Below, piece by piece: positions 4,387 to 49,100 of a stretch of DNA of 64,000 bases. Numbering within the stretch: position 1 is the stretch's first letter; the number at the start of each line of letters is the position of its first letter. The notes beneath the pieces were generated by a model. The model made no database searches. It worked only from the letters and a program-made list of their open reading frames with translations, and was not told the origin of the DNA. Both the position numbers and the translations under genes were made by a program. The stretch is from positions 1-64,000 of the IMG/VR virus record IMGVR_UViG_3300024239_000014. One strand, written 5' to 3'.

Positions 4387-5424
4387 TTACAGGATCAGGC
4401 CGGTCTCGTCAACGACATCACTGCCAGTAACAAACTGGACAGAGTCTTTGCGGGACTTCGCCTTTTCCTCGTAAGCCTTCACGTGACCTTCGATCGTCTT
4501 GGCAATGACGCGCAGTTGATCGATAAAGACCACGTAATGGATCTCGCCGCAGTTTTGCAGCTGGGCTTCTTCAGGGATGTACCCTTCAGCCAGGTATTCC
4601 TGACCGATCTGGATCGGTACCGATTCACGGTCGGTGTACAACGACGCCACGGTAATCGGATGGACGACACCGGCGGCTTTAAACGCCTCGTCGTCTTTAC
4701 CAGCAAAGATTTCCAGCTGTGCCAACTGAGGTTGGGCACGGGACACCAGGTCAAATCGGAGCAGGTTGCGGATGTCTTGGGAATCCATGCCGTCATTGAG
4801 ACCGGAAGCAAGGATTCGCAGGGCGTTAACGGCGCGAACGCATTCAGCATCGATCTCGCTCTTGGGTGCTTCCACCGAATTGTGCGAATACCACATCACC
4901 AGAGGACGGCTGGTGGTTTTGGTAATGCTGTCAAGGCTCTTCAAAGTCTTGAACGTATTGCTGGCAGTGATAGCCGACTCGTGAGAACCAATCACGACGG
5001 CTACGACCGGGACTTCGCGCTTAAGCAGTTCCTGTACGATCAGTGGACCAAAGACCGACCCCGAACCACCCGAGGCCGAAAAGAGGACCACGTTAAAACC
5101 CAGTGCCCCGTGCTCCAGCAACAGGTCACCGATACTCGACGCGATGGGCGACGAGTTCTCACCACGGATCTTGCCGCTACCGTCAACGTCGGGTAGCAGA
5201 AAGACGGGAAGGTTGTCTCCGGCTTGACGGAGATTGGATCTGGAGGTGTCAGCCAGGACGATGTCCGGCGTGGCCAGGCCAGGCTGGTTTTCACCGTAAG
5301 CCAACTTACGGGCCAGGTTAATACCGCAGCCGCCACAACCGTAGATACGAATGCGATTCGGCGCAGTCTTCGCTTCATGGAAAGTCGCGATCTCTTGAGA
5401 CACGGCGACGGGACGTTTTGCCAT
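4387..5424 (-). CDS. phuZ: PhuZ/TubZ phage tubulin
   Basis: IRIYGCGGCGIN nucleotide-binding loop, GSGK, SASGGSGS tubulin/FtsZ signature, acidic C-terminal tail VVDETGLIL. Confidence 0.93.
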   Translation of the reverse strand: MAKRPVAVSQEIATFHEAKTAPNRIRIYGCGGCGINLARKLAYGENQPGLATPDIVLADTSRSNLRQAGDNLPVFLLPDVDGSGKIRGENSSPIASSIGDLLLEHGALGFNVVLFSASGGSGSVFGPLIVQELLKREVPVVAVVIGSHESAITASNTFKTLKSLDSITKTTSRPLVMWYSHNSVEAPKSEIDAECVRAVNALRILASGLNDGMDSQDIRNLLRFDLVSRAQPQLAQLEIFAGKDDEAFKAAGVVHPITVASLYTDRESVPIQIGQEYLAEGYIPEEAQLQNCGEIHYVVFIDQLRVIAKTIEGHVKAYEEKAKSRKDSVQFVTGSDVVDETGLIL

Positions 5425-5435
5425 AGGTATAAGCC

Positions 5436-5735
5436 TCAAATTCGTGGAGCAGTCGGACCTTTGTTCGGGCCGAGTTGATCGAAAGCAGCCATGGTGTTGG
5501 TCTGAATGCGGCGAGCTTCGCGAAGAAGCTCAATCACCCTGTGGTTGTTATCCACCGCAAGTCTCAAAGCGTCTTCAGCGGTCTTTGTCGACAGAGGTGC
5601 TGGTTTGGTGGCGGTCTGGATAGTGGTCAGAAGCATCGCGTTCTTGGCTTCGAGCTCCAGTAACACTTGCTCCAGCAGGTCTTCCAACTTGGCACCGTCA
5701 GGATTGTCACGCGACATCAGGATGGGGTTTTTCAC
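5436..5735 (-). CDS. hypothetical coiled-coil protein, 99 aa
   Basis: Heptad-rich ORF directly upstream of phuZ. Confidence 0.65.
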   Translation of the reverse strand: MKNPILMSRDNPDGAKLEDLLEQVLLELEAKNAMLLTTIQTATKPAPLSTKTAEDALRLAVDNNHRVIELLREARRIQTNTMAAFDQLGPNKGPTAPRI

Positions 5736-5803: not shown

Positions 5804-6637
5804 ATGTCTGGTGCCATCCAAAAAGCGCTTGATGAAATCTTTTTCCAGATTCCGATCGAGGTACTGCAACTAGCGTTCACCTCACAAAACATCTTCCTGA
5901 CCCAACGTCAGGTCAGCATTCCCGCCATGATCCGCGAAGAAGTGATCGAACGACGCGTTCGCATCGATCTCGATTGCGCAGGGGCTTCGCAAGTAGCGAT
6001 CCCGCTGACCGGACTGGTACCCGAGTACCTGGATCAATACACCCGGGTGTTTATCATCCCTGCTTCGTTGACCGATGGTCGTTCAATCAGCGCAACGCTG
6101 AGTGTCTCCTTTGGCCAATACGGGATGTACGGTTATCCGAATGCCCTGAGCCAAGGTCAGTTCAGCGCAGGGATGCCGGGTACGGATCAGTCGGTACTGA
6201 CCAACATGATCGATAACCTGAACAATGCACGTCGTCCTATCGCTCAGGTATCTTCGGCAAATGTTCGTCTGATTGCCGAAAACACTGTGATGATCACCGA
6301 GGTCATTCAACCTACCGCTGAGCTGTACCTGAACTGCCTGCTGGGCAGCGATCAAGAACTGACTCACATCCAGCCGCCGTATTGGCCGATGTTCTCTGAA
6401 CTGGTGGTGTGGGCTACCAAAGCCTACGTGTACCGCAAGCTGAACATCCAGCTCGATACCGGTGCGCTGGTAGGCGGTCAGGGACTGGGACGTATCCGTG
6501 AAGTCGTGGACGGCTACAGCGATGCTGAGCAGACTTACCAAGACATGCGTCGAGAAAAGCTCGGGAAGATGCTCTTCCTGAACGACCCGACACGGCGTAA
6601 GCAGCATCTGCGTCTGCTCATCGGTGGCGGTAACTGA
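5804..6637 (+). CDS. phiKZ-like putative virion structural protein, 277 aa
   Basis: GGAG RBS; followed by hairpin+TATGCCG; family assignment from recall and position near phuZ. Confidence 0.65.
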   Translation: MSGAIQKALDEIFFQIPIEVLQLAFTSQNIFLTQRQVSIPAMIREEVIERRVRIDLDCAGASQVAIPLTGLVPEYLDQYTRVFIIPASLTDGRSISATLSVSFGQYGMYGYPNALSQGQFSAGMPGTDQSVLTNMIDNLNNARRPIAQVSSANVRLIAENTVMITEVIQPTAELYLNCLLGSDQELTHIQPPYWPMFSELVVWATKAYVYRKLNIQLDTGALVGGQGLGRIREVVDGYSDAEQTYQDMRREKLGKMLFLNDPTRRKQHLRLLIGGGN

Positions 6638-6646
6638 GTCATAACA

Positions 6647-6678
6647 AGCGAGGGAGGAAACTCCCTCGCTCTATGCCG
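6647..6678 (+). terminator. hairpin+TATGCCG element
   Basis: AGCGAGGGAG-gaaa-CTCCCTCGCT-CTATGCCG. Confidence 0.7.
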
Positions 6679-6775
6679 CAATTCGAATAACCGTTCTAAA
6701 TCGCTTTCTGAGCGAATCTCTAAGCACGACGGTTCCGTTGTGGGTCTTCACGCTAGAAAACTTCTCTAGCGCGTT

Positions 6776-7351
6776 TTAGAAAGCACGGGTGTTGTATTCT
6801 GGTTCAGGGTATACTGGTTCGTGTAACTGTTCAGCTAAAATTTCGATTAGCTCTTTCTCGTCGTAGTGACGTTCGGTCGATGACAGCATGGTCAGGCATT
6901 GGTTGGCATAACGAGCGTATGCACGTTGGTGATCAGTCGCTGCGTACAGTTCAGCCAAGTGACCAGGGTCGTACCAGAGGGAATTGTTTTCAAGGTTCTG
7001 GAGCGGAATGCAATCGGGACAGCAGTACGTGAACGCTCGAAACATGTCGAACGTTTTGGTGTCGTTGATGGGGAGGAACCGAAGGGCGGTGGTCAGACCC
7101 AGCAGGACAGGGAAGATCTGGCCGATGTAGTAAAACCACGTTGGCTCAGGGGTGTCTGGTCGGTGTTGGTTCAAGCTGTCCAGGAGCTCGTCGTGGTCGA
7201 CGTTGTCCATCTCGACTGTGGACTGGACTGCCAGGTGATAGATTCGCCAACTGCCGTTGTACATCCCCAGTACGGCCAGCTGGGTGTTATCCGCGATGAG
7301 TGGTGAGAGGTCCAGGCTCAGGTGAAACTGATCGGTCAGTACTGCGCTCAT
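6776..7351 (-). CDS. hypothetical protein, ~191 aa
   Basis: GAGGG upstream of the MSAV start. Confidence 0.65.
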   Translation of the reverse strand: MSAVLTDQFHLSLDLSPLIADNTQLAVLGMYNGSWRIYHLAVQSTVEMDNVDHDELLDSLNQHRPDTPEPTWFYYIGQIFPVLLGLTTALRFLPINDTKTFDMFRAFTYCCPDCIPLQNLENNSLWYDPGHLAELYAATDHQRAYARYANQCLTMLSSTERHYDEKELIEILAEQLHEPVYPEPEYNTRAF

Positions 7352-7429
7352 GCAATGTCCCTCGGTGTGTCGCCCCATACGGTATATCCTGCTGTTAAGT
7401 TTAACGTTAGTTGCCTCTTTAGTTTATTA

Positions 7430-7910
7430 CGTACGTACGCACACCCGCGCCCACCGGCGTTAAACAAGCCTTCGTACTACTTACGTAGTACTCAGGTGAT
7501 TATACGGTATTTTCCCTACGGGAAAAATACCGTGTATACACGTGCGTACCCGCACGTATAAATATATATTTAATTAAGAGAATTACGAAATATATAAATA
7601 TATTTCTATAATTTAAACTAAGGAAGTGTGCGCATAGGCGCACACGCTATTATAGTCAGGTACTTGACGTACCTTCCTGGTCGACAGACCACTCACAGTG
7701 TTTTTCACAGGATGCCTAACCTGGTGAAAAACACTATTCGTGTTCGACCTAACTGGGAGAACCTAGCAGGAGTGCTTGTGGTAAACCACGCACTCAAAAC
7801 CGAGTATATTCCTATGGACGGAAAATTCACACCGTAAAAAGTTTTGCACAAACGGGTGTTGCACACAAAGCCCCCCGACCCCCCGCGCTTCGCGGCCGGC
7901 CGGCTGGGTC
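7430..7910. repeat. palindrome-dense intergenic region with AT-rich core
   Basis: At least 9 inverted repeats plus an almost purely A/T stretch at ~7558-7621. Confidence 0.75.
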
Positions 7911-7922
7911 AGGAGGACGACG

Positions 7923-8219
7923 ATGTCATGGCGGACGTGTTTAGCGCGGTGGTCGATGCGCAAACCGCAGGGTGCGGTGCAGGAGCCGCGTGAAGCGGCG
8001 GTAGCGCTGCTGGAGCAAGCGCTCCTGTTGGCGTACGCCAATGGCCTGACCGCACGGGACGTGGCGAGCCTCACCAACGGCGTATGGGATCGGGAGATCT
8101 TCTCACGACAGGCGGTGGATCAGACCGAAGTGCTGCACTCACTACTGGCAGCATGGAGACAGACCTGCGAAGCCAAAGGGGTGGATTGGGTCACCATGCT
8201 GCTGTGTGAAGTTACGTAA
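7923..8219 (+). CDS. hypothetical protein, 98 aa
   Basis: AGGAGG RBS at 7911-7916. Confidence 0.6.
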   Translation: MSWRTCLARWSMRKPQGAVQEPREAAVALLEQALLLAYANGLTARDVASLTNGVWDREIFSRQAVDQTEVLHSLLAAWRQTCEAKGVDWVTMLLCEVT

Positions 8220-15208: not shown

Positions 15209-17575
15209 TTAAGCAGCTCGACTGTTCCAGGGGTTGTAGCCTCCTCGACCACCACCCATTCGGTTAATACCACCCATTCGCGAACGAAGCTGGCGTTTCT
15301 GTTTGATCGATTCCACCAAGTTAGTCAAGGTGTTCATCACCAGTTCTTCCTCGGTGTTAATCTGGCTAGTCAATACTTTAATGCGGTTTTCATATCGCAT
15401 CAAGGTAAAGTCGTCCGTGATGGACTTAATTTGACTTGCCATCATTTCCAGTTCTTCGCGCAGTTTCGTTTGTTCGCGCTTCTTCCGAATGTCCTCTTCG
15501 GTCATCGGTTTCGAAGCATCACCAACGAGTGCCATGACCGACAAGGTATCAATGCCATAGAAGTCCAGGTGTTTACCTTCCATGATAAACCAGGCTGCCA
15601 ACAGCCATGACATCACCATGTCGTCGTGTCCGCTGGTTTCATGGTCAATACGCCCCTTCTTCACCACCAGCGATCGAATCTGTTCCGACAGCTGTTTATC
15701 GCGTACCAGGTGCCCTGCCTTCTTCGCAGCATTCTGCAAGATACGAGAGTACAGATGCTCACGACTATTCCCGGTCGTTACGAAACCGAATTCACGGATG
15801 TAGCGATCGTGGAAATAGGTGCTTCTGCGACACAAATCGACCATAATGGCCTTGAAGTCTTCACGGCGATCGTGCTGTTCATCGACAATCTTGTTGTAGA
15901 TGCGCTTGAAGGGGTCTATTCCGCGCTGTGGCAGCATCAGCAGAAGTTTACCTAGGATGGCCGGCGCTGAGCTCTTACGTTCAATCACGAGCGTGGTATT
16001 GCGATACCGCGTCATGAAGTCCGCAAGGAAGTCCGCAAAGGTAATCAAGTTCGTTTCGTTAAACGACCCTGCACCTACCGTTGACATATCTCGTACGTCC
16101 ATCACTAACATCGCGATTTCATCTCGACCAATAGCATCACTGGTATCCATGCCAATGACGAAGTGACCTTGATGCATGGTGTTGTACACCAACGATTCTG
16201 GAATGTACCATCGGAATGCGTAGCAGTCTTTGGTAATTTCTGTGTGCTTTGGTGATTGCTCGCTCTTTTGGATGATTTCCAGCAACTGGATCGACAGCGG
16301 TGAGCCTTGAGAACCACTACTCCAAACGTTGAAGAAGTCGCGGTTGATCTGCTCAGGCGTACCACCGGCGTTGCTGATAGCGTCTTTGAGCCAAGCATCG
16401 CTAAAGCCCAACTGACGGTGCGAGAAGGTACAGTTCACCATGGTACGCTTCGGCGCGTTGTCGTTCTCGCTGAGCTTACGACAACTGTTCCTCACGACCA
16501 AGTGCAAGCGTACTTTACTCGGGATGTCCATAAAGGCTTCAGACCACGGTGCAGCCCGTTGGAACATCTCGTACATAAACCGTCCTGACCGGTCATCCTT
16601 CTTACCAGCCGTTGTGGTGAAGATGTTCCCGTATGGCTGACCAGTACGCTTGGACTCGTTACGGGCAGCGGTACCTGCTGCCAGTGCCGCTGGTAGTGTG
16701 ATGTCAATGTACGTCGTAAACGGACCTTCGTCACACTGCGTGATGGGTACGGTGTTACCACGAGCCACGTTGTTAGCAGCTGTTTCAGAGTTCTGAGCCA
16801 CTGACGTGATGTACTTGTTACCCAGCTTCTTGTAAGTCAGTTCTTGTTGGTTGTTGGCATCGAGCTTATCGGGATAGACCAAGTACTTGGGCAACAGGTC
16901 TCGAATCTTCTTCAACCGCTCGATGTTTGCCGTTCGCAGTTTATCGTCTTTAGTAATCAGCGAAATTGTGGTGTTGTTAAGTCCGATGAACAACAGGTAA
17001 ATCATCAAACAGTCCGTAGACACTGACTTACCAGTCTGACGAGGTTGGATCAACCCAACGTCGACATTGGAGAAGAACAACCAAATGAGCGAGATGTTCC
17101 CACGGTTTGCTCGGAACTTATCGGGAATGTTACCGGCAGACGGTGGGATGCGGACCACTTCACGGAAGTAATACCATGGATTGTATTTACACTCCATGGC
17201 GATCTTGACTTTGGTGTCAAAATCCAAATTCGGATCATGGGGGTCTACATGCTCCAGTTCAGGCTGCATAAGCGCCAACATGAAGTAGTAGTTCTTCACA
17301 CCCATCTTGCGGTATAGTCCAGCGAGTTCCACAAACGAGCGGTTACGCGTCGAGGTGTGAACCATCGCTGTAGGGAAGTACCGCCAGTCATCGGCAAAAC
17401 GAATCATGGGAATAGGATTGACACCAGGTTCTTCGCCTTCGATTGTGTCGTCCAACTCGTCCGTTTCTAATGCTGAGGCTAGTTCTTCCAAATCACGATT
17501 GATGAAGGCGTCAGTTAGGTCACCAGTCTTTTTGGCGGTAACGCCTAACTCAGCTTCTTTGCTTTTCACGAACAT
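15209..17575 (-). CDS. terL: terminase large subunit (phiKZ gp25-like)
   Basis: Walker A PRQTGKS, Walker B ..CDEG, nuclease motifs IGMDTS and HDDMVMS. Confidence 0.93.
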   Translation of the reverse strand: MFVKSKEAELGVTAKKTGDLTDAFINRDLEELASALETDELDDTIEGEEPGVNPIPMIRFADDWRYFPTAMVHTSTRNRSFVELAGLYRKMGVKNYYFMLALMQPELEHVDPHDPNLDFDTKVKIAMECKYNPWYYFREVVRIPPSAGNIPDKFRANRGNISLIWLFFSNVDVGLIQPRQTGKSVSTDCLMIYLLFIGLNNTTISLITKDDKLRTANIERLKKIRDLLPKYLVYPDKLDANNQQELTYKKLGNKYITSVAQNSETAANNVARGNTVPITQCDEGPFTTYIDITLPAALAAGTAARNESKRTGQPYGNIFTTTAGKKDDRSGRFMYEMFQRAAPWSEAFMDIPSKVRLHLVVRNSCRKLSENDNAPKRTMVNCTFSHRQLGFSDAWLKDAISNAGGTPEQINRDFFNVWSSGSQGSPLSIQLLEIIQKSEQSPKHTEITKDCYAFRWYIPESLVYNTMHQGHFVIGMDTSDAIGRDEIAMLVMDVRDMSTVGAGSFNETNLITFADFLADFMTRYRNTTLVIERKSSAPAILGKLLLMLPQRGIDPFKRIYNKIVDEQHDRREDFKAIMVDLCRRSTYFHDRYIREFGFVTTGNSREHLYSRILQNAAKKAGHLVRDKQLSEQIRSLVVKKGRIDHETSGHDDMVMSWLLAAWFIMEGKHLDFYGIDTLSVMALVGDASKPMTEEDIRKKREQTKLREELEMMASQIKSITDDFTLMRYENRIKVLTSQINTEEELVMNTLTNLVESIKQKRQLRSRMGGINRMGGGRGGYNPWNSRAA

Positions 17576-26166: not shown

Positions 26167-26198
26167 CGGGAGGACCGAAAGGTCCTCCCGCTATGCCG
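26167..26198 (+). terminator. hairpin+TATGCCG element
   Basis: CGGGAGGACC-gaaa-GGTCCTCCCG-CTATGCCG. Confidence 0.72.
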
Positions 26199-26251
26199 CA
26201 ATGCAAAAAAAAACAGCGCGATTGCTGTTTTTCCGTAGCATTGCACTACGG

Positions 26252-26716
26252 TTACTCCTCGCGAGCCCATTCGGCTACCGCAGTTTTCAGGTTCTGCAGT
26301 CCACAGCGGTAGCCGTTGCGACCCGGTGTTGCAGCCTTACCGTTGACCCACTCCGGAGCCTCCTTGAGGATTTCTTCGAAGGAGCGCTTGGTGCCCGATA
26401 GTCCGATGCAGAGGTAACCGAGCGGGCGTTCGGTCGCCCGGAGTTCTCGCCAAAACTCCAACATCCGCGCTTTGCGCGCGGCGCCGGCGTTGTATACCCG
26501 TTGGGCCGGCCCGCCGATTACGAGATATACCACACTCTCGCTCTCGTAGAGATCTTCGAGCGTTTCAACCACGTCATCCCAATTGACAACACAGACGCGG
26601 TGAACGAGGCGATGATGGCCAACTCCGAAGGTGGCGCCGTCGAGCTCGATCAAGTAGCCAGAGGCTACCTCGATAGAGACAGGGCAGTCTTCTCTAAAAA
26701 TTGCTTCTACGTACAT
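26252..26716 (-). CDS. hypothetical protein, paralog of 27195-27584
   Basis: Shares YVE.IFR.DCP.S, VVYLV.GGP.QR.YN and YLC.G.S.T. Confidence 0.8.
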   Translation of the reverse strand: MYVEAIFREDCPVSIEVASGYLIELDGATFGVGHHRLVHRVCVVNWDDVVETLEDLYESESVVYLVIGGPAQRVYNAGAARKARMLEFWRELRATERPLGYLCIGLSGTKRSFEEILKEAPEWVNGKAATPGRNGYRCGLQNLKTAVAEWAREE

Positions 26717-31525: not shown

Positions 31526-31550
31526 TCACCTAGGGAATATAGGTTTGAAA
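31526..31550 (-). promoter_or_regulatory. putative early promoter
   Basis: TTTCAAACCTATATTCCCTAGGTGA, a near copy of 27107-27131. Confidence 0.55.
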
Positions 31551-31568
31551 TGTTTTTAAACTCAATTG

Positions 31569-31602
31569 CGGCATAGAGGGGGGATCTTTCGATCCCCCCT
31601 CT
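31569..31602 (-). terminator. hairpin+TATGCCG element
   Basis: + strand CGGCAT-AGAGGGGGGATC-tttc-GATCCCCCCTCT. Confidence 0.7.
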
Positions 31603-36860: not shown

Positions 36861-37988
36861 TTAACTGTCTTCAAAAAAGAGGGCAGCCCCAACTTTCGAG
36901 CCTTCCAGCATCAGTCGGCTCATGATACCGATCTGATAAGGAGAACCCACGATACGGTTAAAAATCGACATGTGTCCGAACTTGCCGTCCAGCTGCAAAC
37001 CGGACTCGGTTTCCATCACCCCTTCGTACGTTCGACAGGTTACGGATTTCAGCTGGTTACCAAACACCAACTTATCACCGCCGCCGTAGTCTTCTTCGTA
37101 GGTAATGAAATAACGCACCGCCACGGTATCCTGTTCAAGTGGATACCCTTCGATTCGTACCCGGTCCATGACTTCGCCGTCTTCTGCTTCGTCGTTCCGG
37201 AGTTTCCGGACCAATGCAGCGCGTTTACGGTTGTAGGCTTTCACCAACTCCCGCAATGAGTCGGACATGTCTTCGAGGTCCCCTCGATAAAAGACCTCAA
37301 TCTTTTCCACCGTACCCTCGACTTTCGCCTTGGGTGTATGGGATGACAGCATCTTCAAAGTGTCCAACGACATCTCGTCGAAGAGCCCTGAATTGGCCGT
37401 CAGTTGGTCTTCAATCGTACATAGAATTGAGTCAGAGTCAACGATTTCGCCCTCTTTCACAATCCCACGGACCTCTTGGTCGAACTTCAAAATCACTGCT
37501 TTGACTTTCGTGAGTTTGGTCTTAAGCTTCTCGGCAGAACGTGACATCAACGCCGAGGAGTCCTCAAACGTATCTGCGTCATCAAGGATCGCCACGTTAA
37601 ACAGTGCGCCAGATTTCCACAACACCTGTGTCGGGTAGAAGTGGTCTCTGACGAACCAGTGACTATTCCAAGCCAAGACATCGCCCTTAACGAACGATTG
37701 ACCAACCACCACATCTGTTTCTACCTGATGTGGATAGCAACTCCCTTCAGCCCGCCCGAAGCGGCGACCGAGTTCTACCGACGTAACGGTCCCGTCTTTG
37801 TACTCGATCAACAGATGGTTCGGGCTAACCTCTTTCACCATCCCATCAGCCGTCGCAGCAAATGCGTAAAGGTCGCCCACACGCTTAGACAGGACATTTT
37901 CATATCCGGTCACAGTCGGCATGTAGGTATAACCTTCAGCAGCAATACCTGACGATTGTTGGATGCTGGCAAAGAGGGCACGTTTCAT
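36861..37988 (-). CDS. virion RNA polymerase beta-like subunit (gp178-like), exon 2
   Basis: MKRALFASIQ, TFEDS, GDKLVFGNQLK (RpoB GDK motif). Confidence 0.9.
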   Translation of the reverse strand: MKRALFASIQQSSGIAAEGYTYMPTVTGYENVLSKRVGDLYAFAATADGMVKEVSPNHLLIEYKDGTVTSVELGRRFGRAEGSCYPHQVETDVVVGQSFVKGDVLAWNSHWFVRDHFYPTQVLWKSGALFNVAILDDADTFEDSSALMSRSAEKLKTKLTKVKAVILKFDQEVRGIVKEGEIVDSDSILCTIEDQLTANSGLFDEMSLDTLKMLSSHTPKAKVEGTVEKIEVFYRGDLEDMSDSLRELVKAYNRKRAALVRKLRNDEAEDGEVMDRVRIEGYPLEQDTVAVRYFITYEEDYGGGDKLVFGNQLKSVTCRTYEGVMETESGLQLDGKFGHMSIFNRIVGSPYQIGIMSRLMLEGSKVGAALFFEDS

Positions 37989-38330
37989 CTAATGTCTTCA
38001 ATGTGGCCTAACCACACCCGTGCACCGCATGCACTGCTCCAGGTTTTCCCTGGATGTAGAGACTATATCTTCACCCTCGCTGGATTTGCGATAGGGTGCC
38101 TCCCATTTCGGCGGATGCCTACGAGCTCGCGCTCTAGTCGTTGAACGTTCTTCCCAGTAGGAAGCTTCGCTGCGGATTACCCAATCCCAGTCTCTTTTAC
38201 CATACCCAAGTGATTAGCTTGGCCACCTGTACATTACTGTTACAAGCTTGGTGTACTGGGCTTTCAGTGGATTCCCGTCAGTTAGAGAGGATTCGCTACC
38301 GGATTACGCCGGTAGAGGACTATGTAAATA
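37989..38330 (-). mobile_element. group I intron, 342 nt, no internal ORF
   Basis: P (AACUGACGGGAA 38283-38272), Q (AAUCCGCAGC 38178-38169), R (GUUCAACGACUA 38146-38135), S (AAGAUAUAGUC 38071-38061); P1 with U-G wobble at the 5' splice site; terminal G; splicing gives in-frame HDD|MKRAL. Confidence 0.93.
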
Positions 38331-41300
38331 ATCGTCGTGAACGATCGAGGGTGACAGGTTACCAGTAGTACTCAACACCGATGTCAACCCGTCGCCATTC
38401 TTGTCGAACGCTCGTGTGACACCATAAAGGTTGGTGAAGTTCGGATCAGAAGACAGGTAGGTGTTCACCGCCACTTCAGACGAGTCCACCGTTGCTTCAG
38501 AAACCACCCCGAAGTCAGAATCATCGTACGCACGTGTGCTGCGCACCATGGTGCGACTACTGCGACCGCCAGTACCACCAAAGGTCACAGCTTCCTGTTC
38601 TTTCAAGTGGTGAACCGGGTTGATGTCCTGCACCAGTGTGATACTCGGATCGCTCTGAATTGCATTCCATACCGCATTGGGCTTGATGTCAATGCTGGCT
38701 CGACTCGTTACCGGTTTTCCATGGTACTGTTTCAGCGCCATAGCCAATTCACGATACACGGCACCGGCAATACGCTCGTAGCCTTTGAATCGATCTGGAC
38801 GGTGTTCCACTTCATCATTCTGAAGCATTTCCACGGAGCGGAAAAGCAGCCCATCAAAAGTGGTTGGTTCCTGGTAGCTTTCCAGCAACGTCTTCGTGAT
38901 CGGATCTACGAAGTGCAGCATCAGCACATCAAGCTCACGCAGCTGTCTGGCTGTCATCCCAAGCCCATCGAGCAGGTTCAGGTAGACATCCTGCCGGTTG
39001 AACTCCTTCACGGAATAGTGCGACATCTGCCGGTGGAAACGGTTCATGCCAGAAAGCACCAACGCTGCTTTTCGGTCGTGGCGCGACAGAGCCCAGGTTT
39101 CATCCTTAAAGCGCAGTGAATATTCACCATGCTCCAGGGTGGCCTTTTGCCCCTTGGGAATACGGCGAGGTGTTACCCCCAGTCGTCGGCAGAGTTCGTC
39201 CAAACCGAAGTAGTAGCCGAAGACAAACCCGAGCGGGATTTCCTTACCGGCCACTTTTATCTCGATCTGTTCAATCGGCGCTTGGTTGTTATCAAAACCA
39301 ACCAGATCGCCAATATCGCCCACTGGCATTGGTTTACCGTCTTCCGTGGTATAAAGCGCATCGCGATCATCGACGTACAGGAACTTCGAGTTGTCTTCAC
39401 GTCGTCCCATGACCACCAAGCCGTCGATCTCACCTGCCAAGGCATCTGCACCAAAGAAGGCGGCGCGGTTGTCGTAGTCGAAGTTCAACTCCCAGCCATT
39501 TACGGTAAAGCCGATAAAGCGACTGGTCAGGATGGTGTACAGACGAGGAAGGCGCGACCCCTTCTTCCGACCCTGGGTTTTGTACGCCAGCTTGGAAACA
39601 GTGGCGTTATCACCCATTGACATGTAGATGATGCGGTTCTGCAACCACCGACCGTAGTTGTGCACGGCCTTCTCAGAACGTTTCACAAAGAGCTTGCCGT
39701 AGTAGCTGGTCAAAGCCACTTTATCCGGAGCCACCTTGTGGATCGGACAATCACCTCGTTGCTTACGCAGACGGTATTTCACGCCATCGGCCACCCAGCT
39801 ACCGTCTTCAGCCACGACCGGCAGCTCGATCCGCACGGTCGTGGGTTTGCCAGCCACTGGGACCAGTTTAACAGTGATCACGTCGTATTTGTTCAGAGCG
39901 TCTTTGACGCGCTCTACTTCGTACGACGTCACGGCAACACCCGAATGCTGCAGCGACATGATCATCCGCGCTACGTCTCGATGCAGGACGTCTTTGATGT
40001 ACGCCTTGTCGAAATCGAGCAGCGTACTTCTCAGCATGGTCTTGTCAGTGACTGCTTCATGGTCAGTTACAGAGAGTCGTTCGGGCTTCAACGAAACATC
40101 GCTGTCTTTGACATCAATCAAGTCAGCCAATGTCCCTTGACCAAAGGGGTTTTCGATGGACTTGTAACTGTTCGCCAGTTTTTCAAAGCGACGAAATTCG
40201 GCTCCAGAAATCATAGCGTGTTCAAGCAAGCGTTCAGCGCTGTGGATTACACCGAGTTCCGGTTTCGCAGTCAGGTCAATCGCCGCTTTACTTTCATTAC
40301 CCACCTGCCCCAGTTCCACACCAGGGATGTGGAGCTCAAACAGATCGTCATTCCAAATGTCCACAGCACCTTCTGCCAGAGCTTCGAGTTCTTCGCGATA
40401 CTCGTCAGCTTCTTTTTCAGACATTTCAGGAATGGCGGCTTCCTGCTCTTCTGGCATCGGTGTATCTTTCAGACGTTCAGGTACGGTAGCGCCTGGTGCT
40501 TCGCTACCGCTGTCGCTTTCATCGTCAGTGTCGTGGACTGGCGGTAGATCACTGTCTTCTTCGACAGCATCGACCTGTACTGCGGTGAAGACGTTTTCAG
40601 CACGCAGCTTGGCGAGTTGGATAAAGAAGTAGTAGACCTTCCGTTGAAAGGTTTCCATGCTTGCATCGATGACATCACCATCGGTCTTTGCACGCGCTTT
40701 GCGCCACCCATCCAATTGACCGAGGTTGATCACCCCACCCTGACCGTTATCAGTAACCACCAGGTTCACACGAGCCAGAGCCTCGGGCTTGATTTTCGAC
40801 AGCAACGACTCACCGTGCTTCTTACCAGCCCAAGTCCACAGGTCGAGCAGAAACATCGACTCGTACGTCGACAACGATTCCACCACGTTTTTAGACAGGC
40901 TATTTTCACCCATCTTCAACAGCGCTAACCGCGGCAGGTGTTGCGGTAGGTTGATGTGGATGTAATGCTGACGATCGCTCTGGATAGCAATGTCGTTGAT
41001 GGTTTCGATCATCGTGGCAAAAATGTTCTGCCAACGATAATAGTTTGCCATGAAGTTAACGGGGTAGCGGTACAGATGCTGGAGTAACGCGTAGTTGATA
41101 ACCAGGGTAGACCGCAGGTCACGATCCACCATGTCAAACTGCCGCACCCGTCTGAGCAGACGGTTCTTCTTCTCCAGGTCGCGGATTGCAGTACCGGCAT
41201 TGATAGACCCCATGCGAATAGGTCTACCTACTTCACTTTTAAGTTCTGCCACATGCTGACAGTACAGCAACCCGCCCTTGCGCTGAATGAACGGGTCGTT

Positions 41301-41459
41301 GTTATCCAACGACCGTTCTTGTGTGTTCAGTGGCAGATAATGGTACACCGGCCGTAGGGGAAAGGCCAATTCAACCAAGGGCTTAAATGCAAAGCCTGTC
41401 AGTTGTTGCTCTTTCCACACCCCGTTCTTACGGTAGTACTGTGGGTATTTTAAAAACAT
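38331..41459 (-). CDS. virion RNA polymerase beta-like subunit (gp178-like), exon 1
   Basis: GTGGRS.R.M and SEATVDS motifs; ends in HDD; spliced product 1418 aa. Confidence 0.9.
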
Positions 41460-43187: not shown

Positions 43188-46100
43188 ATGTCTTACAGGA
43201 ACAAACCGATGGCTAAGAAAGACGATATCGATCTGGACAATGACTTCGATTTCGATGATTTCGAAGACTTTGACGATTTTAATGTCGATCCCCCGAAAGA
43301 CGACCGAAACCCTATTGTTAAAACAGGGGTGGCGGTCATTAAAGGCGCTGCCGAAGGGGTCGCTAGTGAGACCTTTTTGCGCGAGTTTACTCGCGCTGCT
43401 ATGCCCCCTGGATATAGCGAAGCATTTGACCTCGTCAGCGACGTCAAGAACCGTACGAGCAGTCTATACAATGAAGCCCGTACTAAATTAAAGCCAGCCA
43501 TCCGTGACGCCAAGAAAGCCGTCAATGCAGTGATGCCTGCGGCAGAAAAACTCCTGCCCAAAAGGCTGGCTGAAAAGATCAAAGCGGCAGTGGCACCCGA
43601 GAAGGAATTCTCGAACCAACAAGCTACTGCACAGGACTCTGAAATCACTGGCACCTTGGCATCGATCTTTGATGCACAAGTTCAGTTGGCTGAAGCAGAT
43701 AAAAACCGCCAAGAAGCCGAAGCGGTTATCAAAGACCGCCGTGACAGCAAGCGCCATGAAGAATCCGTGGTGGTTCTCCAAGACATCCGCGATGCTGCTG
43801 CCCGTCTGGTAGGGTATCAGGATAACGTTCTGTCCAAGTTCCAGCGCAAATCGCTGGAGCTCCAGTACCGCCAGTTCTTTGCTACTCGCGATTTGTTGGC
43901 GGTTACCCAATCGACAGCAAAAGCCACCATCGACGAACTCAAGGCAATTGCGAAGAACACCGGCCTTCCGGATTACGTGAAGATCCACAGCAGCGAAGCC
44001 TTTAAACAGGCGATGCGCGATAAGCTGATTGGACGCTTCACTGATTCTGCCGCCGAGTTTTCGCGGAACTTCCGTGAGAAGGTGTTTAAGAACATCAGCG
44101 AACGCGTGATGTCGAATGTCAATACATTCAAGGACTCCTTCTCTGCTGCCGCCCAGATGGGTGATGATCTCTCATCAATGAATGAGATGATGGCGGATGC
44201 GGAAGAGATGGGTATGGGTGGTGGTCGGACCGAGATGGCCGGCAACTTCGCTGGCGGTATGCTTGGTCAGTGGTTGGGGATTCGTGCAGGACGAAAACTT
44301 AGAAAGTACACTGAGTCGCACGATAAGACGGTTGCAACTGGCGCCGACCTGCTGTACAAGGTCCGTAACTCACCACAGCTGCTGTCTGAGTGGGCGAAGT
44401 CGCCTACTGACTACATGTCTAAGTACGGGATGTTGACTGACCTTGCAAAGTCGGTCATTCCGATCTTCAGTGGTCCTGGGGCAGAAGTTACAAATGCAGG
44501 CACGGCAGACGTTGTCGGCAATGCCTTCTTTGATAACCAAACCCATCGTTCAATCAACGAGGTAATTCCGGGATATCTGTCCCGTATTTACCAGACCATG
44601 GAAGGGATTCGTACCGGCGAAATGCCGGACCGCGTGGTGTACAACCACGAGCGCAACGCATTCACCTCGTACAAGCAGTCGGTTGGCGATATCAAACGCC
44701 GCCTGATTGCTCCCCAGGAACTTGAGTACTTCAAGAAAAATGTCGACGCCACGGTCGACCGGGTGGATGGTGATAAGAAGCTGAGTCCAGAAGCGCGGAA
44801 GGCACTGGCCGATCAGTTGTCAAAAGACGCCTATGCTAATAAGCGGTTTGACCCGACTCGTATGGTAACAGACGACGGGTATCATTCATCGATCGATACT
44901 GCAGTGCGGGATGAGTTGAAGGAGCATTTCCGGAACGCATTCGACCTCGACGATGACGGCAAAATGAGAGAAGGTGCAAAACCTCGCACGTTCTTGAATG
45001 AAGTCGATCGCTATTACAAAGACGTCATCAACAGCATGCCCAACCCCTACAGTCGTGTTAACCTGTATGCCAATACAGGACAGCGCGAACAGTTGCGGTC
45101 ATTGGGACTACTTAATCGCGTCGGTTTGCAAGATACCGTGGATGGTGCTTGGATGTCGCGTGTCCTCGCTGACCACCAGGCTGATACCCTGGATTACGAC
45201 GGCGTTGAGACGGACAGACCTACTGACACCCTGCGCCAGCGTGGCGGGAAGGGTCGGGCATCTAAAGCAGAGATTGCTGCATTCCGCACCCTTGCCGAGG
45301 AGTTAAAGAAGTTACGTGAGCAAGGAATTTCGAGCGGCCTTTCGAATGGCCAAAATGGGCCTCTTCATACTGGCAATGGCGCTCCTGGCGGTCCTGCTGC
45401 TGGTCCTGGAGCTACCCCTACGCCTGTGCCGCCGCCCCCGCAAGCGGGTGGAGCCGGTGGAGTAAGCAAGTGGGAAGAGACGATTAACTCAATCGTTGAC
45501 GGAACGGATCGGACTACGCAAGAAATCCGATCCTTCCGCGACGCACTGATGTCTGCTACTGGCGGAACCAACGAACTACTTGTGAAGGTGGTCGAAGCAT
45601 CCGCAATCATTGCCGATTTGATTCCTACAGCCGGTAGCGGGAGCGCTGGTACACGTGGCGGCAATCGCCGTTCGGTGGGTCAGATGATCAGCGGTGGGTT
45701 GGCAGGTATCATTGATAAAGGTCTGTGGTTGGGTGGTAAAGGCCTTGGTGCTATTTGGCGTGGCACTGGCCATACAGCCAAGGGTGCTTGGTGGGTTACC
45801 AAGAAACTCGCGGGACTCCCTTTGGCAGTGGCTTCAGGTACGATTAAGTACGGCCAGAAGCTTATGGAAAAGAGTCCGTTGAATTGGCTGCGCGAGAAGA
45901 AAGAAGCCATCAAGGGAGCTATCGACTTGCGTGCTGCCGATGGTCGCATTCTGATCGAGAAAGCTCGGCTGGCCGCCGGTGAATACCGCGATGCCATTAC
46001 AGGAGAAGTGATCAAACGTGTTCAGGATATCAAAGGTCAGCTACTGGATCCGGATGGTAAAGTAGTTTTGACCATTGAAGACATCAAGAAAGGTCTTTTT

Positions 46101-49100
46101 ACGGAAGAGGGTCGTCGCGTCTATTTGAAGCATGTGGGTGACATCATCCACGGCATTGATGGACGTGTGCGTGGTAGTGCCACTTTCCGTCGTATCCGGA
46201 ACCTTTGGAACTGGGATGCTGAAAAGATCTGTGACGTCTATATCCGTGATAAACCTGACCTTCCGGTCATGCAGGCGGTGGATATCCAACAGGGTAAATA
46301 CCGTGACAAGAAGTCAGGTCGGGTGATCAAAACGATCGGGGACATTGAAGGTGCTGTGGTTGACTGGGATAACAACCTGGTACTGACCGATGAACAGTAT
46401 TCAGATGGTCTCTTCGACCACAAGGGCAAACGCCTCAACCGCAATGTTGTTGGACGGGCCTTTGGTGCAGCCGTTGGTCTCGTCAAAGGCGGGCTCAATA
46501 TAAGCAGCTTGATGATGAAGCCGATGCAATGGATGGCTAAGAAGGCCAAGAGCGGCCTTAGGTCAATCCTTGTACCTTTTGACGTGTACGTCAAGGGCGA
46601 AACGTCGCCGCGACTGTTAGCCAGACTGATTCGTGCTGGTCAGTACATCTGTAAGTCCACCGGTAAAACAGTGGTATTGTATTCAGATATCGAAGGCCCT
46701 ATCGTCCACCGTAGCGATCCAAACGGTAATGAGCTCGTTACATTGGCCGAAGTTACCGCAGGACTTGTAGACCGTTTTGGGCGCCCTATCGAAGGGATTC
46801 CAAAGCGCCTTGTGAAGCTGGGTGTTGAAGCTGGCATCAAGGCTATTAGAATGGTTGGCAAGGTTGGTAAGTGGGCGTTGGATAAATCCAAAGGTGCGTG
46901 GGACGTGATGTCCAAGGGACTGGGTAAGTTCACGAGTTATCTCCGCGAACACTGGATCGGTAGCACTGAGGAAGTCAAACGCAGCAACAGCCTCCTGGAG
47001 AAAATCTACGAGCTGTTGGATGAGCGTTTACCAGGCGGTGGCAAGCGACGTCGCAAGGGTCGTAAAGGCCGTGGTGCAGCGGTGGCTGACAATGTCAAAC
47101 TCGACCAGAATGGCAATCCTGTCGGTAAACACGATAGTGATGGCGATGGTGATCGTGACGGGTCTTGGCGTGATATCTTGGCCAACAAAGCCAAGAACGC
47201 CAAAGACAAAGCGAAAGCACTGATTGAGAAGGTCAAAGCACCGAAAGGTAAAGGCCTGCTTGGCATGCTCTCCACGCTGACAGCAGGGATCGGTTCACTG
47301 ATTTCTGCCATTGCGACATTCAACCCGCTGAAGTTCCTGACTAAGATTCCTGGCCTTGGTAAGCTCGGTAAACTGGCTGCCGGTGCTTGGGGTGGTATGA
47401 AGGCACTCGGGTTAGGAATTGCTGGTCGCGCCACAGCCGGTGGAGTCATGGGTACGCTGGGTAAAGGGATTGGTGCGGTTGGCCGGTTTGTTGGTCGCAA
47501 CATTCTCTGGCGTGGGTTAACTTGGGCTGCCTTTGGCTTGGCCAGCGTGGTCAGCACGCCAGTACTGGCTGTTGGTGCGGTGGTTGCCGGTGCTGCGATC
47601 GGTGGATATCTGCTGTATAAGTACCTGACCAAAGAAAACAAGCTGACTCGACTGCGCGCCTTGCAGTACGGTATCGACCCGGATGATAACGACCAGGTAG
47701 GACCTGTTGCCAAGCTCGAAGAAATCTTTGGTCCTCATGTGACGGTAAATCGCGTGGGTGATTTGAAGGTAGAAGGCGAGCCTGACATGAAACAAATGTT
47801 GGAGCCTTTTGGTATCGATCCTCAGAATGACGGCGATGTCGCACGTTTCGCTCAATGGACGGTGTGGTTCAAGGATCGTTTCAAACCGGTCTACTGTAAG
47901 CATCGCATCGAACTCGGGACCCGTGTACCTGAAGCCGATATTGGCGATGTGGATAAAGTGATCAAGCCCGAATACAAACTCCCGTTTGCTCGGGGTACGA
48001 TGATTACCACCGAACCCAGCCCGTACAACGTGACACATTCGCCGTTTGGCGATCAACCATTGCCTGTGGGTACGGAAAAGATCCGTGCCTTGATTTCTGA
48101 GATCGAAAAGGAATTCGGTCAGAAGGAAATTAAAACCGATAAAGGTACTTACCGTCCTGCTTTGCAGGGGTTGACGGTTCCTAATCGGTTCGCTGGCAAT
48201 AGCGCTGCAGATGAGGCCGCACGACGGACACTCGAAGGCTTGAGCAAAGACGAGTACTTGACTGAAGACGAAGCCAAACGCCAACGTGATAAGTTGGGTA
48301 CTGTGGGTGCTGGCACTGTTACCTGGAGCACTCTGCCGGTGAATCGGATCGATGAGATCACCTCTATTCGATTCCGTGTTTACGGGATGTCCAAGCTTCT
48401 GGTATCGCACACCAATGCGTTGATGTCGTTCGAGAAGGACGTCATGGACATGGTGGACCTTGGTGCTGGTAAAGACGCAGTATTCAGCGGTGATCAAATT
48501 ACCATCTACGAAAAGTATGCTTCGTTGTTTAACCGCTTGGCGGGTAATGAGGCAGACCGGACGCAGTGGACCTACTGGATGATGAACCGTTTCTTGCCGA
48601 CCTTCTTGGCGTATGTCGGAATGGTTCGTAAGTTGGTTCCCGGTGGATTGGTCAGTGAAGCATGGAAGAACTTCAAACCTGAGCAGAAGCTTCAGGTGGC
48701 AGAGGCGTTAGCAAACGTGCGCGTGAAAATCAAGGATGATGAAGTCTCGGTCTGGAAGATCGAGGCGGGTCCGTTCCCAGATCTGGAAGTGAACACCAAC
48801 CCAGAAAGTATCAAGCCGATCCTGGACGCGCTCCGTAAGGCGGTACTGGACAAGAAGGTGGAGGAATCCTTCAAAACGGACGCGCAGAAGAAAGCCGAAG
48901 CCGAAGTCGGTAAGCTGGTCAAAGGAAAGAATCTTGGGATCGCCCCAGGTACTGGTCCGCTCATGCCTACGGGCAACGGGAATCAGGTAGGCTTCCTGGA
49001 CGGCATGATGGGTGGACTGGCGGCTTCGGCTGGTGGTCAACCTGTAGCGGCTATCGTAACGGGTAGTGGTGGTAAGGCGTCGGATATCACAGCAGGTACG

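What the first reader, a model, noticed from the sequence alone, without database searches (positions are those of the whole stretch)
7430..7910. Array of back-to-back palindromes around an AT-rich core: candidate origin or structural element
Seen between divergent genes: GTACTAC/GTAGTAC (7474-7491); a ~16-bp stem (7501-7536); ACGTGCG/CGCACGT (7540-7557); an almost all-A/T core with its own palindromes (7558-7621); GTGTGCGC/GCGCACAC (7626-7645); AGGTAC/GTACCT (7658-7674); TGGTC/GACCA (7678-7691); AGTGTTTTTCAC/GTGAAAAACACT (7697-7735); GAGTGC/GCACTC (7770-7795); and a GC-rich end (7871-7910). Most stems are strand-symmetric, unlike the RNA candidates. Inference: a DNA-level element (replication origin with unwinding element, packaging site or genome tether) or a long ncRNA.
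Basis: partly seen in the sequence, partly recalled or inferred. Interest (0 to 1): 0.62.

Follow-up and report, generated by a model that had tools for sequence, protein, structure and literature searches.

The report
Conserved palindrome-rich unwinding element, jumbo phage
A 400-base non-coding stretch of an uncultured nucleus-forming jumbo phage holds the easiest-to-melt DNA of the whole 250-kb genome, flanked by hairpin-forming palindromes that relatives keep through matched changes on both arms; it is most likely a DNA-level control site such as a replication origin, which is not known for this phage family.

Summary

The window is the first 64 kb of a 249.6-kb chimallivirus (phiKZ-like) contig that carries PhuZ, chimallin, TerL and a gp42 homolog.

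- **Unique core:** the AT core (7557-7616) is the least stable 60-mer of the genome by a wide margin, and the only 40-mer with at least 85% A+T.
- **Single copy:** the element occurs once and matches no Rfam family.
- **Conservation:** it is far better conserved than its neighbour genes. One relative's flanking protein is 32% identical, yet it keeps a 20-nt invariant word and helices A, B, C, D, G and H.
- **Stems:** I counted about 17 compensatory pair changes over 61 stem positions, with no G·T pair.
- **Wider reach:** hairpin A recurs in cultured Xanthomonas phages LucasX and RTH11.
- **DNA-level signs:** two hairpin loops are found inverted between relatives, and a recombination junction sits at the edge of the AT core.

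Best reading (about 0.4): a strand-symmetric DNA element, probably a replication origin or unwinding site. A structured RNA (about 0.25) is not excluded. No replication, packaging or transcript data could be obtained.

The parts
6776..7351 (-). Left flanking gene, a 191-aa orphan protein
   Evidence: ORF and start read. No PHROG, Pfam or Atlas family. Homologs at 97%, 64% and 32% identity mark the relatives.
7417..7436 (.). Invariant 20-mer CTTTAGTTTATTACGTACGT. It holds TTACGTA, and its first bases form the left arm of a long-range inverted repeat (7416-7426 with 7614-7624).
   Evidence: Identical in all five aligned relatives. Unique in the 249.6-kb genome, and TTATTAC is not a repeated promoter word. 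Related word AAGTTTACT(T)ACGTACTT in the L014-L018 clade. Inverted repeat I13, kept in all sequences.
7474..7491 (.). Hairpin A, GTACTAC-ttac-GTAGTAC, carrying the word TACTTACGTA
   Evidence: Same 18-mer in LucasX (loop flipped to gtaa) and in IMG/VR contig L019. RTH11 has AGTAGTAC-taaa-GTACTACT, a C:G to G:C compensation. The word occurs only inside the element in the fetched loci of the relatives that carry it; L007 and RTH11 lack it.
7501..7538 (.). Hairpin B, a long imperfect palindrome with two bulges on the 3' arm
   Evidence: I1. Three sequence versions (window, L007, L008) all pair, with bulges in the same places.
7540..7557 (.). Hairpin C, ACGTGCG-tacc-CGCACGT
   Evidence: Three compensatory pair changes in L007 and L008, with loop tRcc kept.
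7557..7621 (.). AT-rich core (candidate unwinding element) with internal AT palindromes
   Evidence: Only 40-mer island with at least 85% A+T in the genome. Least stable 60-mer in the genome. About 64 nt here, 70 nt in L005, about 35 nt in L007 and L008. A TAAGAA insertion in a wastewater relative. In all 10 relative loci the least stable 60-mer lies in the syntenic gap.
7615..7626 (.). Conserved box AAACTAAGGAAG. It is the right arm of the long-range inverted repeat and the site of a recombination junction.
   Evidence: Identity between the window and L007 jumps from below 80% to 97-100% here. Metagenome contigs break or replace the sequence at 7436/7614.
7626..7645 (.). Hairpin D, GTGTGCGC-atag-GCGCACAC
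   Evidence: The loop is inverted to ctat in L005 and L006. One compensatory pair change in L008.
7658..7691 (.). Hairpins E (AGGTAC/GTACCT) and F (TGGTC/GACCA)
   Evidence: Stems are kept while the loops vary in L005-L007. In L008 three unrelated hairpins replace them.
7697..7735 (.). Hairpin G, a 12-bp stem with the conserved 15-nt loop AGGATGCYTAACCTG. The left arm holds TTTTTCACA, a match to the relaxed DnaA-box pattern.
   Evidence: I2. Three compensatory pair changes in L008 while the loop is kept. DnaA-box-like 9-mers: 2 of the 18 genome sites lie in the gap.
7770..7795 (.). Hairpin H, GAGTGC..GCACTC with a nested GTGG-taaa-CCAC
   Evidence: Two nested compensatory changes in L008.
7841..7865 (+). 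Direct repeats GTTTTGCACA and GTGTTGCACA (third copy GTTTTTCACA at 7700)
   Evidence: D1. GTTTTKCACA has 3 sites in the genome, 2 of them here.
7871..7904 (.). C tract CCCCCCGACCCCCC followed by GC palindromes
   Evidence: A C5N3C5 tract also lies in the syntenic gap of the L014-L018 clade.
7923..8219 (+). Right flanking gene, a 98-aa orphan protein. This slot is variable: 217 aa in L008, absent in the L014 clade.

Best explanation
The stretch 7417-7800, with looser flanks out to 7352 and 7922, is a single-copy cis-acting DNA element of a chimallivirus lineage. It is most likely a replication origin or other site where the duplex is opened.

Proposed working, all inferred:
1. The AT core melts first under negative superhelical stress, because it is by far the weakest duplex of the genome.
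2. The flanking palindromes then fold back on both single strands.
3. This holds the bubble open and presents fixed words to a phage protein that starts replication. Those words are TAC(T)TACGTA at the top of hairpin A and the 15-nt loop of hairpin G. The protein could be an initiator, primase or helicase loader.

Shown: uniqueness, extreme instability, conservation above that of the neighbouring genes, stems kept by matched changes on both arms, and strand symmetry. Not shown: opening, protein binding, or replication start.
For: - **Least stable duplex:** it is the only 40-mer island with at least 85% A+T in 249.6 kb. Its 60-mer scores -55.1 kcal/mol, against -67.7 for the next and a mean of -86.0, sd 4.3. 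In all 10 relative loci the least stable 60-mer also falls in the syntenic gap.
- **Single copy:**
- **Conservation:** L008 and L009 keep the 20-mer and helices A, B, C, D, G and H, although the adjacent protein is only 32% identical.
- **Stems:** about 17 compensatory pair types over 61 stem positions, no G.T, and one non-pairing terminal position.
- **Loop flips within collinear flanks:** helix D atag/ctat and helix A ttac/gtaa between L019 and LucasX. Orientation is therefore free while the letters are kept, as expected if both strands matter.
- **Signature word:** TAC(T)TACGTA and TACGTA are concentrated in the element across clades.
- **Recombination junction:** it lies exactly at the edge of the AT core. 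From my own knowledge, phage T4 origins are recombination hot spots.
- **Position:** the element lies between the DNA polymerase/PhuZ cluster and TerL.
- **Not a transcript signal of known type:** no terminator of the genome's own type and no copy of its promoter-like family lies inside it.
- **Not coding:** indels among relatives are not multiples of three.
Against: - There is no direct replication signal. GC skew follows gene direction and shows no turning point here. Coverage could not be profiled, because the one reads call held contigs only.
- There are no iterons or tandem repeats.
- No recognisable initiator gene lies next to it.
- Covarying stems with an invariant 15-nt loop, and bulges kept on one arm, are also the classic picture of a structured RNA.
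- The genome has other dense hairpin arrays without an AT core, so hairpin arrays by themselves are not specific to this site.
- The signature was not found in phiKZ, or within 10 kb of the gp42 homolog in three more distant clades.
- In the L014 clade the parts are ordered differently, and the gap lies between co-oriented genes.
Confidence: 0.4

Rival explanations
1. A structured RNA. This would be either a long 5' leader of the 191-aa gene on the minus strand (or of the variable plus-strand gene), or a free ncRNA of about 400 nt. Its hairpins would be the functional units, for example in stability, protein binding or translational control.
For: Stems covary while loops are conserved (helix G loop, helix C loop) and bulges sit on one arm only in helix B. 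Fold z-scores are near -9. One G-C to G-U change in the long-range pairing fits the plus strand. In the L014 clade the minus-strand copy of the conserved inverted repeat holds the Shine-Dalgarno sequence of the downstream gene. Short contigs over 7416-7499 and 7837-7987 occur in a metatranscriptome run.
Against: No G.U pair occurs in 61 stem positions over all lineages. Neither strand folds better consistently, and G-U counts flip between sequences. The loop flips would change an RNA tetraloop (UUAC to GUAA, AUAG to CUAU) yet are tolerated. A 64-nt stretch of almost pure A/U whose length varies two-fold is odd for a folded RNA. There is no Rfam match. No promoter or terminator of the genome's own types bounds it. 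The RNA-library contig runs on upstream of the element and may be DNA.
Confidence: 0.25
2. A regulatory hub for the two divergent genes. The palindromes would be operators for dimeric phage regulators, and the AT core would hold promoters.
For: It lies between divergent genes in the window and in LucasX. TACGTA and CACGTG are perfect short palindromes and are enriched here. A weak sigma-70-like match lies in the AT core.
Against: The stems change sequence freely while pairing is kept. Operators do the opposite, because a protein reads the letters. All the palindromes differ from one another. In the L014 clade the gap lies between co-oriented genes, and the plus-strand gene is missing. The regulated genes are poorly conserved orphans while the element is highly conserved. 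The sigma-70 scan is no better than shuffles. From my own knowledge, phiKZ-like phages do not use host RNA polymerase.
Confidence: 0.12
3. Another DNA-handling site: a packaging start (pac) for the terminase, a recombination or resolution site, or an anchoring site for the genome inside the phage nucleus.
For: It is single-copy and conserved. It lies 2-7 kb from TerL in LucasX, L008 and the window and 2 kb from PhuZ. A recombination junction lies at the edge of the core. The loop flips show that the palindromes are active at the DNA level.
Against: No read-end pile-up could be tested. Contig breaks at 7436/7614 are explained by co-occurring strain variants. There are no repeated binding sites of the kind found in tubC-type centromeres. 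No small-terminase or adaptor gene was recognised nearby.
Confidence: 0.13
4. No function of its own. A tolerant non-coding gap in which palindromes arise and are kept perfect by template switching during replication.
For: Whole hairpins are replaced by unrelated hairpins at the same place, and hairpins are gained or lost. Loop inversions and perfect Watson-Crick stems are what arm-to-arm copying produces. Other hairpin arrays exist in the genome.
Against: Unpaired words are conserved across clades whose proteins share 30-40% identity: the 20-mer, the AAACTAAGGAAG box, the 15-nt loop of G, and TACTTACGTA. Template switching cannot preserve these. The unique AT core is kept in every lineage.
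Confidence: 0.08

Closest known systems
Herpes simplex virus oriS/oriL (my own knowledge)
   Same: Both are single or few-copy origins lying between divergently transcribed genes. Both have an A+T-rich centre that is itself palindromic, flanked by short recognition words, and the unwound strand folds into a hairpin that the initiator uses.
   Different: No UL9-like initiator or repeated box is identified here. There are many different flanking hairpins rather than one large palindrome. It is a bacterial virus. Function was not tested.
Phage T4 oriF/oriG and the T7 primary origin (my own knowledge)
   Same: Both have a unique easily melted stretch in a non-coding gap next to transcription signals. 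T4 origins double as recombination hot spots, and here a junction sits at the edge of the core.
   Different: Those origins are defined by a promoter whose transcript primes DNA synthesis. No promoter could be placed here, and those origins do not carry arrays of covarying hairpins.
Hairpin origins of rolling-circle replicons (HUH Rep: circoviruses, geminiviruses, pT181; my own knowledge)
   Same: A conserved short word is presented on a hairpin whose stem covaries. TAC(T)TACGTA sits in or at the top of hairpins in three clades.
   Different: No HUH Rep gene was found with two Pfam families (the second search had no working positive control). The genome is a 250-kb double-stranded phage.
Bacterial oriC type (DnaA boxes plus an AT-rich unwinding element)
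   Same: There is an AT-rich unwinding element with nearby 9-mers that fit the relaxed pattern TTWTNCACA (7701, 7842).
   Different: Only two relaxed boxes and none with the consensus TTATCCACA. There is no dnaA or dnaN context. Whether host proteins such as DnaA reach the DNA inside the phage nucleus is unknown.
TubZRC partition centromere tubC/tubS (my own knowledge)
   Same: It lies 2 kb from the phage tubulin gene PhuZ.
   Different: tubC sites are arrays of one repeated word bound by TubR. Here there are no iterons and no adaptor gene was recognised.
phiKZ-type intrinsic terminators (PMC10914365)
   Same: Both are GC-rich perfect hairpins in non-coding DNA of a chimallivirus.
   Different: The genome's terminators are hairpin plus TATGCCG. 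No hairpin of the element has that tail, and the element sits between gene starts, not gene ends.

Membership tests
Any Rfam RNA family | Covariance-model match at the family's gathering score | tested here: not met
   No hit in the region at gathering scores. The best hit at E below 10 scores 29 bits against a threshold of 80.
Origin with a DNA unwinding element (generic) | A locally extreme, easily melted AT-rich stretch | tested here: met
   Unique island with at least 85% A+T. Least stable 60-mer of 249.6 kb, 7 sd from the mean. The same holds in 10 of 10 relative loci.
Origin with a DNA unwinding element (generic) | Replication starts there (copy-number peak, bubble arcs, autonomous amplification) | not testable with these tools
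   Only contig-level data were available. GC skew is uninformative.
Iteron-type phage or plasmid origin (lambda, P4, SPP1) | Several copies of one initiator-binding word | tested here: not met
   No tandem array. Only 2-3 copies of short words: GTTTTKCACA and TAYTAC(T)TACGTA.
Iteron-type phage or plasmid origin (lambda, P4, SPP1) | Initiator gene overlapping or adjacent | tested here: inconclusive
   The flanking proteins are orphans with no Pfam, PHROG or Atlas family.
oriC / DnaA type | Cluster of DnaA boxes next to the unwinding element | tested here: inconclusive
   Two relaxed boxes lie in the gap, of 18 in the genome (about 0.04 expected). None is TTATCCACA.
Transcription-primed origin (T4 oriF/G, T7) | Promoter directly upstream of the unwinding element | tested here: inconclusive
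   There is no copy of the genome's 10-site promoter-like motif and no repeated TTATTAC word. Other promoter classes of this phage are unknown.
HUH rolling-circle origin | Hairpin presenting a conserved word | tested here: met
   TAC(T)TACGTA lies on hairpins in the window clade, the L014 clade and the LucasX clade.
HUH rolling-circle origin | HUH Rep or gpA gene in the genome | tested here: not met
   PF05840 and PF02407 give no match in the 249.6-kb record. The PF02407 search had no working positive control.
tubC-type centromere | Iteron array bound by a TubR adaptor next to the tubulin gene | tested here: not met
   PhuZ is 2 kb away, but there are no iterons and no adaptor was recognised.
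phiKZ-type intrinsic terminator | GC hairpin followed by the TATGCCG/TTAT tail at a gene end | tested here: not met
   The CTATGCC sites are listed and none lies in 7352-7922. The motif is as in PMC10914365.
pac site | Preferred DNA ends in virion DNA, next to terminase genes | not testable with these tools
   TerL is at 15209-17575, 7.3 kb away. No raw virion reads were available.
Chimalliviridae (the host genome of the element) | Chimallin, PhuZ and gp42-like core genes | tested here: met
   Chimallin scores 92 bits, over the cut-off. PhuZ matches phrog_4733 at 7e-80.

The most novel reading that the evidence does not exclude
This is the first recognisable replication origin of nucleus-forming jumbo phages. 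It would be a single site where the weakest duplex of the genome opens, and flanking palindromes fold out on both strands to present a fixed word (TACTTACGTA on hairpin A) to a still unknown phage initiator. The same hairpin in the cultured Xanthomonas phages LucasX and RTH11 would make this directly testable.
Probability: 0.35. Interest if true: 0.8.

Novelty: new variant of a known kind. Interest (0 to 1): 0.62.

Why it matters
My two literature searches for an origin in phiKZ-like phages found no report that defines where these phages start copying their DNA inside the phage nucleus.

This is a conserved, single-copy, easily melted element with structure-preserving evolution. It is shared with two cultured phages, LucasX and RTH11. 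That gives a concrete site to test by marker-frequency sequencing, plasmid amplification, pull-down of the protein that binds hairpin A, and deletion.

If it turns out instead to be a structured RNA, it would be a new large phage RNA family absent from Rfam. Either way it is a useful landmark for annotating this clade of jumbo phages.

Tried and rejected
- **Known RNA families and tRNAs:** the Rfam gathering and E-value scans and the tRNA scan found nothing in the region.
- **Phage DNA database:** blastn against 50,697 phage records gave no match, even at E = 10.
- **IMG/VR scans:** scans with peptides of the flanking genes and with the 23-nt loop word of helix G found nothing.
- **Metagenome scan:** the 19-mer scan found only the window's own contig plus two AT-rich chance hits, L010 and L011.
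- **18-mer hit L020:** it lies inside a polymerase-like coding region and was treated as chance.
- **phiKZ early-promoter idea:** I recalled the early-promoter word as TATATTAC and asked whether the invariant 20-mer is such a promoter. I dropped this, because TTATTAC is not a repeated upstream word and the 20-mer is unique.
- **Genome's own promoter-like motif:** it has no copy in the gap.
- **CTATGCC word:** it first looked like a promoter, but it is the tail of phiKZ-type terminators.
- **Sigma-70 and terminator scan:** no better than shuffles.
- **GC skew:** no turning point.
- **Strand test by G-U counts and fold energies:** inconclusive.
- **Iterons and tandem repeats:** none.
- **Flanking proteins:** no family. 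The Atlas hint of an RNase-H-like fold for the 191-aa protein scored 0.82, which is below the useful range.
- **HUH Rep genes:** none found.
- **LucasX AT island:** no AT island at the 40-mer threshold.
- **More distant clades:** phiKZ lacks hairpin A. Three more distant clades (L025-L027) show no signature within 10 kb of the gp42 homolog.
- **Small ORFs in the gap:** 7628-7837 and 7322-7561 were rejected as coding, because relatives carry indels that are not multiples of three.
- **Reads:** I laid 5,501 letters only. All four runs were contigs, so starts, ends and depth could not be used.
- **Not used or not seen:** No other genetic code was used. The large representative protein search was not used.

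Full report
**What the window is**

The window is the first 64 kb of a 249,640-bp IMG/VR virus record with 51.6% G+C, from a subsurface metagenome. The record encodes:
- a PhuZ tubulin at 4387-5439, minus strand (phrog_4733, 7e-80);
- a homolog of phiKZ gp42 (DUF7484) at 5804-6637;
- chimallin at 244126-245661 (92 bits, over the cut-off);
- a large terminase at 15209-17575.

It is therefore a nucleus-forming jumbo phage (Chimalliviridae). It is distant from cultured ones: the best PhuZ identity is 43%, to Xanthomonas phages RTH11 and LucasX.

**Checking the observation**

The finding lies in a 570-bp gap between two divergent orphan genes, 6776-7351 (minus) and 7923-8219 (plus).

The pattern is not chance:
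- Both strands fold about 9 standard deviations better than dinucleotide shuffles.
- The stretch ties for third in the genome for density of tight perfect hairpins.
- The AT core is the only 40-mer island with at least 85% A+T in the whole genome.
- The core is also the least stable 60-mer: -55.1 kcal/mol, against -67.7 for the next and a mean of -86.0, sd 4.3.
- The element is single-copy.

**Relatives**

Laying metagenome contigs on the stretch showed that variants exist. I fetched their DNA through homologs of the flanking proteins.

Three lineages of the same clade carry the element:
- near-identical ones (L005, L006, L013);
- L007, whose left flanking protein is 64% identical;
- L008 and L009, whose left flanking protein is only 32% identical.

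The non-coding element is kept much better than the genes beside it. A 20-nt word, CTTTAGTTTATTACGTACGT, is invariant. So are the box AAACTAAGGAAG and the 15-nt loop of helix G.

The stems of helices B, C, D, G and H differ between lineages but always pair. I counted 17 compensatory pair types over 61 stem positions. There was one terminal non-pair and no G.T pair at all. Without selection, or copying between the arms, so many matched double changes would not be expected (my inference).

The AT core stays AT-rich, but its length runs from about 35 to 70 nt.

**Beyond the clade**

A second clade has a gp42 homolog 55% identical to the window's and 46% G+C (L014-L018). It has a 460-640-bp non-coding gap in the same place. 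That gap contains:
- AT-rich palindromes;
- TACGTA pairs;
- one or two hairpins presenting TTACT(T)ACGT;
- the same short inverted repeat, CTTTAGTTT/AAACTAAGG;
- a long CT-rich tract.

The parts are ordered differently there, and both neighbour genes point the same way.

Hairpin A also occurs in other phages:
- as the exact 18-mer in Xanthomonas phage LucasX (between LUCX_35 and LUCX_36);
- as the exact 18-mer in a 311-kb IMG/VR contig (L019);
- in RTH11 with a C:G to G:C swap in the stem.

In every fetched relative locus (10 of 10) the least stable 60-mer lies in this gap. The word TAC(T)TACGTA occurs nowhere else in the fetched loci of the relatives that carry it; L007 and RTH11 lack it.

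phiKZ lacks hairpin A. Three still more distant clades show no signature within 10 kb of their gp42 homolog.

**DNA or RNA?**

For DNA:
- The stems are purely Watson-Crick.
- Neither strand folds better consistently.
- Two hairpin loops are found inverted between close relatives whose flanks are collinear. Helix D has atag in the window and ctat in L005 and L006. Helix A has ttac in L019 and gtaa in LucasX. The loop letters are kept but their orientation is free. That suits a site where both strands count and would alter an RNA loop.
- A sharp recombination junction lies at the right edge of the AT core. The window and L007 are 97-100% identical to the right of 7614 and below 80% to the left.
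- No terminator of the genome's own type (hairpin plus TATGCCG, as in phiKZ; PMC10914365) lies inside it, and no copy of its 10-site promoter-like motif.

For RNA:
- The 15-nt loop of helix G is invariant.
- The bulges of helix B stay on one arm.
- One G-C to G-U change in the long-range pairing fits the plus strand.
- Short contigs over the element occur in a metatranscriptome. These may be DNA.

**What it most likely is**

I commit, at about 0.4, to a strand-symmetric DNA element where the duplex is opened, most likely a replication origin. The AT core would melt first. The palindromes would fold out on both strands and present fixed words to a phage protein.

This works like the AT-rich palindromic origins of herpes simplex virus, which also lie between divergent genes. 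It also resembles the promoter-plus-unwinding origins of T4 and T7. Both comparisons rest on my own knowledge. It is not a member of any tested family:
- there are no iterons;
- only two relaxed DnaA-like boxes are present;
- there is no HUH Rep gene;
- no initiator was recognised among the orphan neighbours;
- there is no Rfam family.

The rivals are:
- a structured RNA or long leader (0.25);
- another DNA-handling site such as a pac or recombination site (0.13);
- an operator and promoter hub (0.12);
- functionless palindromes kept by template switching (0.08).

**Limits**

I obtained no replication, packaging or transcription data. GC skew tracks gene direction only. The covariation rests on three to four independent lineages. 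The helix B alignment contains indels, so two or three of the 17 events depend on how the arms are aligned. The genome has other hairpin arrays that I did not resolve.

**Novelty**

The two searches of the held paper library for an origin in phiKZ-like phages returned no paper that defines one. The element has no Rfam family. I rate it a new variant of a known kind (a viral origin-like unwinding element), with interest 0.62. It is conserved, single-copy and directly testable in the cultured phages LucasX and RTH11.

Noticed in passing
window 38037-38340 (-): Group I intron (RF00028, 78.5 bits, full-length model). It lies between ORFs 36861-37988 and 38304-41459 on the same strand, so it probably splits a gene.
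   Followed up: no
window 6640-6680, 26167-26200, 31540-31580 and elsewhere (27 CTATGCC sites genome-wide, many of them this type): A family of GC-rich hairpins (GAGGGAGG..CCTCCCTC) followed by (C)TATGCCG. This is the same design as the phiKZ intrinsic terminators described in PMC10914365.
   Followed up: partly
window 27124 and 31543; genome 67089, 105550, 130157, 135261, 158075, 165240, 189336, 224585 (all on the minus strand): Ten copies of a roughly 45-nt promoter-like motif, aATc.AAT.C.Aa...ATtTCA.ACCTATAT..Ct.a.GTGA, often just after a terminator. It may be one promoter class of this phage.
   Followed up: partly
genome 223941-224365 (L022), 164985-165324 (L023), window 26167-26481 (L024): Other dense arrays of different perfect hairpins, 11 in a row at 224 kb, without an AT core. 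ORFs on both strands overlap them and there is no Rfam match. Their nature is unknown.
   Followed up: partly
window 7614 rightwards, compared with L007: L007 is 100% identical to the window from 7770 to beyond 8900, but only 55-88% identical to the left of 7614. This is a recent recombination between two lineages, with the junction inside the element.
   Followed up: yes
L014:5517-5720 and the same place in L015-L018: A roughly 200-nt polypyrimidine (CT) tract with C5N3C5 lies inside the syntenic gap of a related clade. Read on the other strand, it is full of GGAG/AGGAG words.
   Followed up: no
L015:1-1782: A Cache/MCP-signal (chemoreceptor-type) gene lies next to the PhuZ gene on one relative's contig. 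It is either an assembly chimera or a host-derived gene.
   Followed up: no
window 43188-50333 (+); contig ends: A 2381-aa ORF that causes the strongest local GC-skew swing. Separately, I take the large ORF at 247382-249532 to be the DNA polymerase, by synteny only, and gene order in relatives suggests the contig ends are contiguous, so the genome may be circularly permuted or circular.
   Followed up: no
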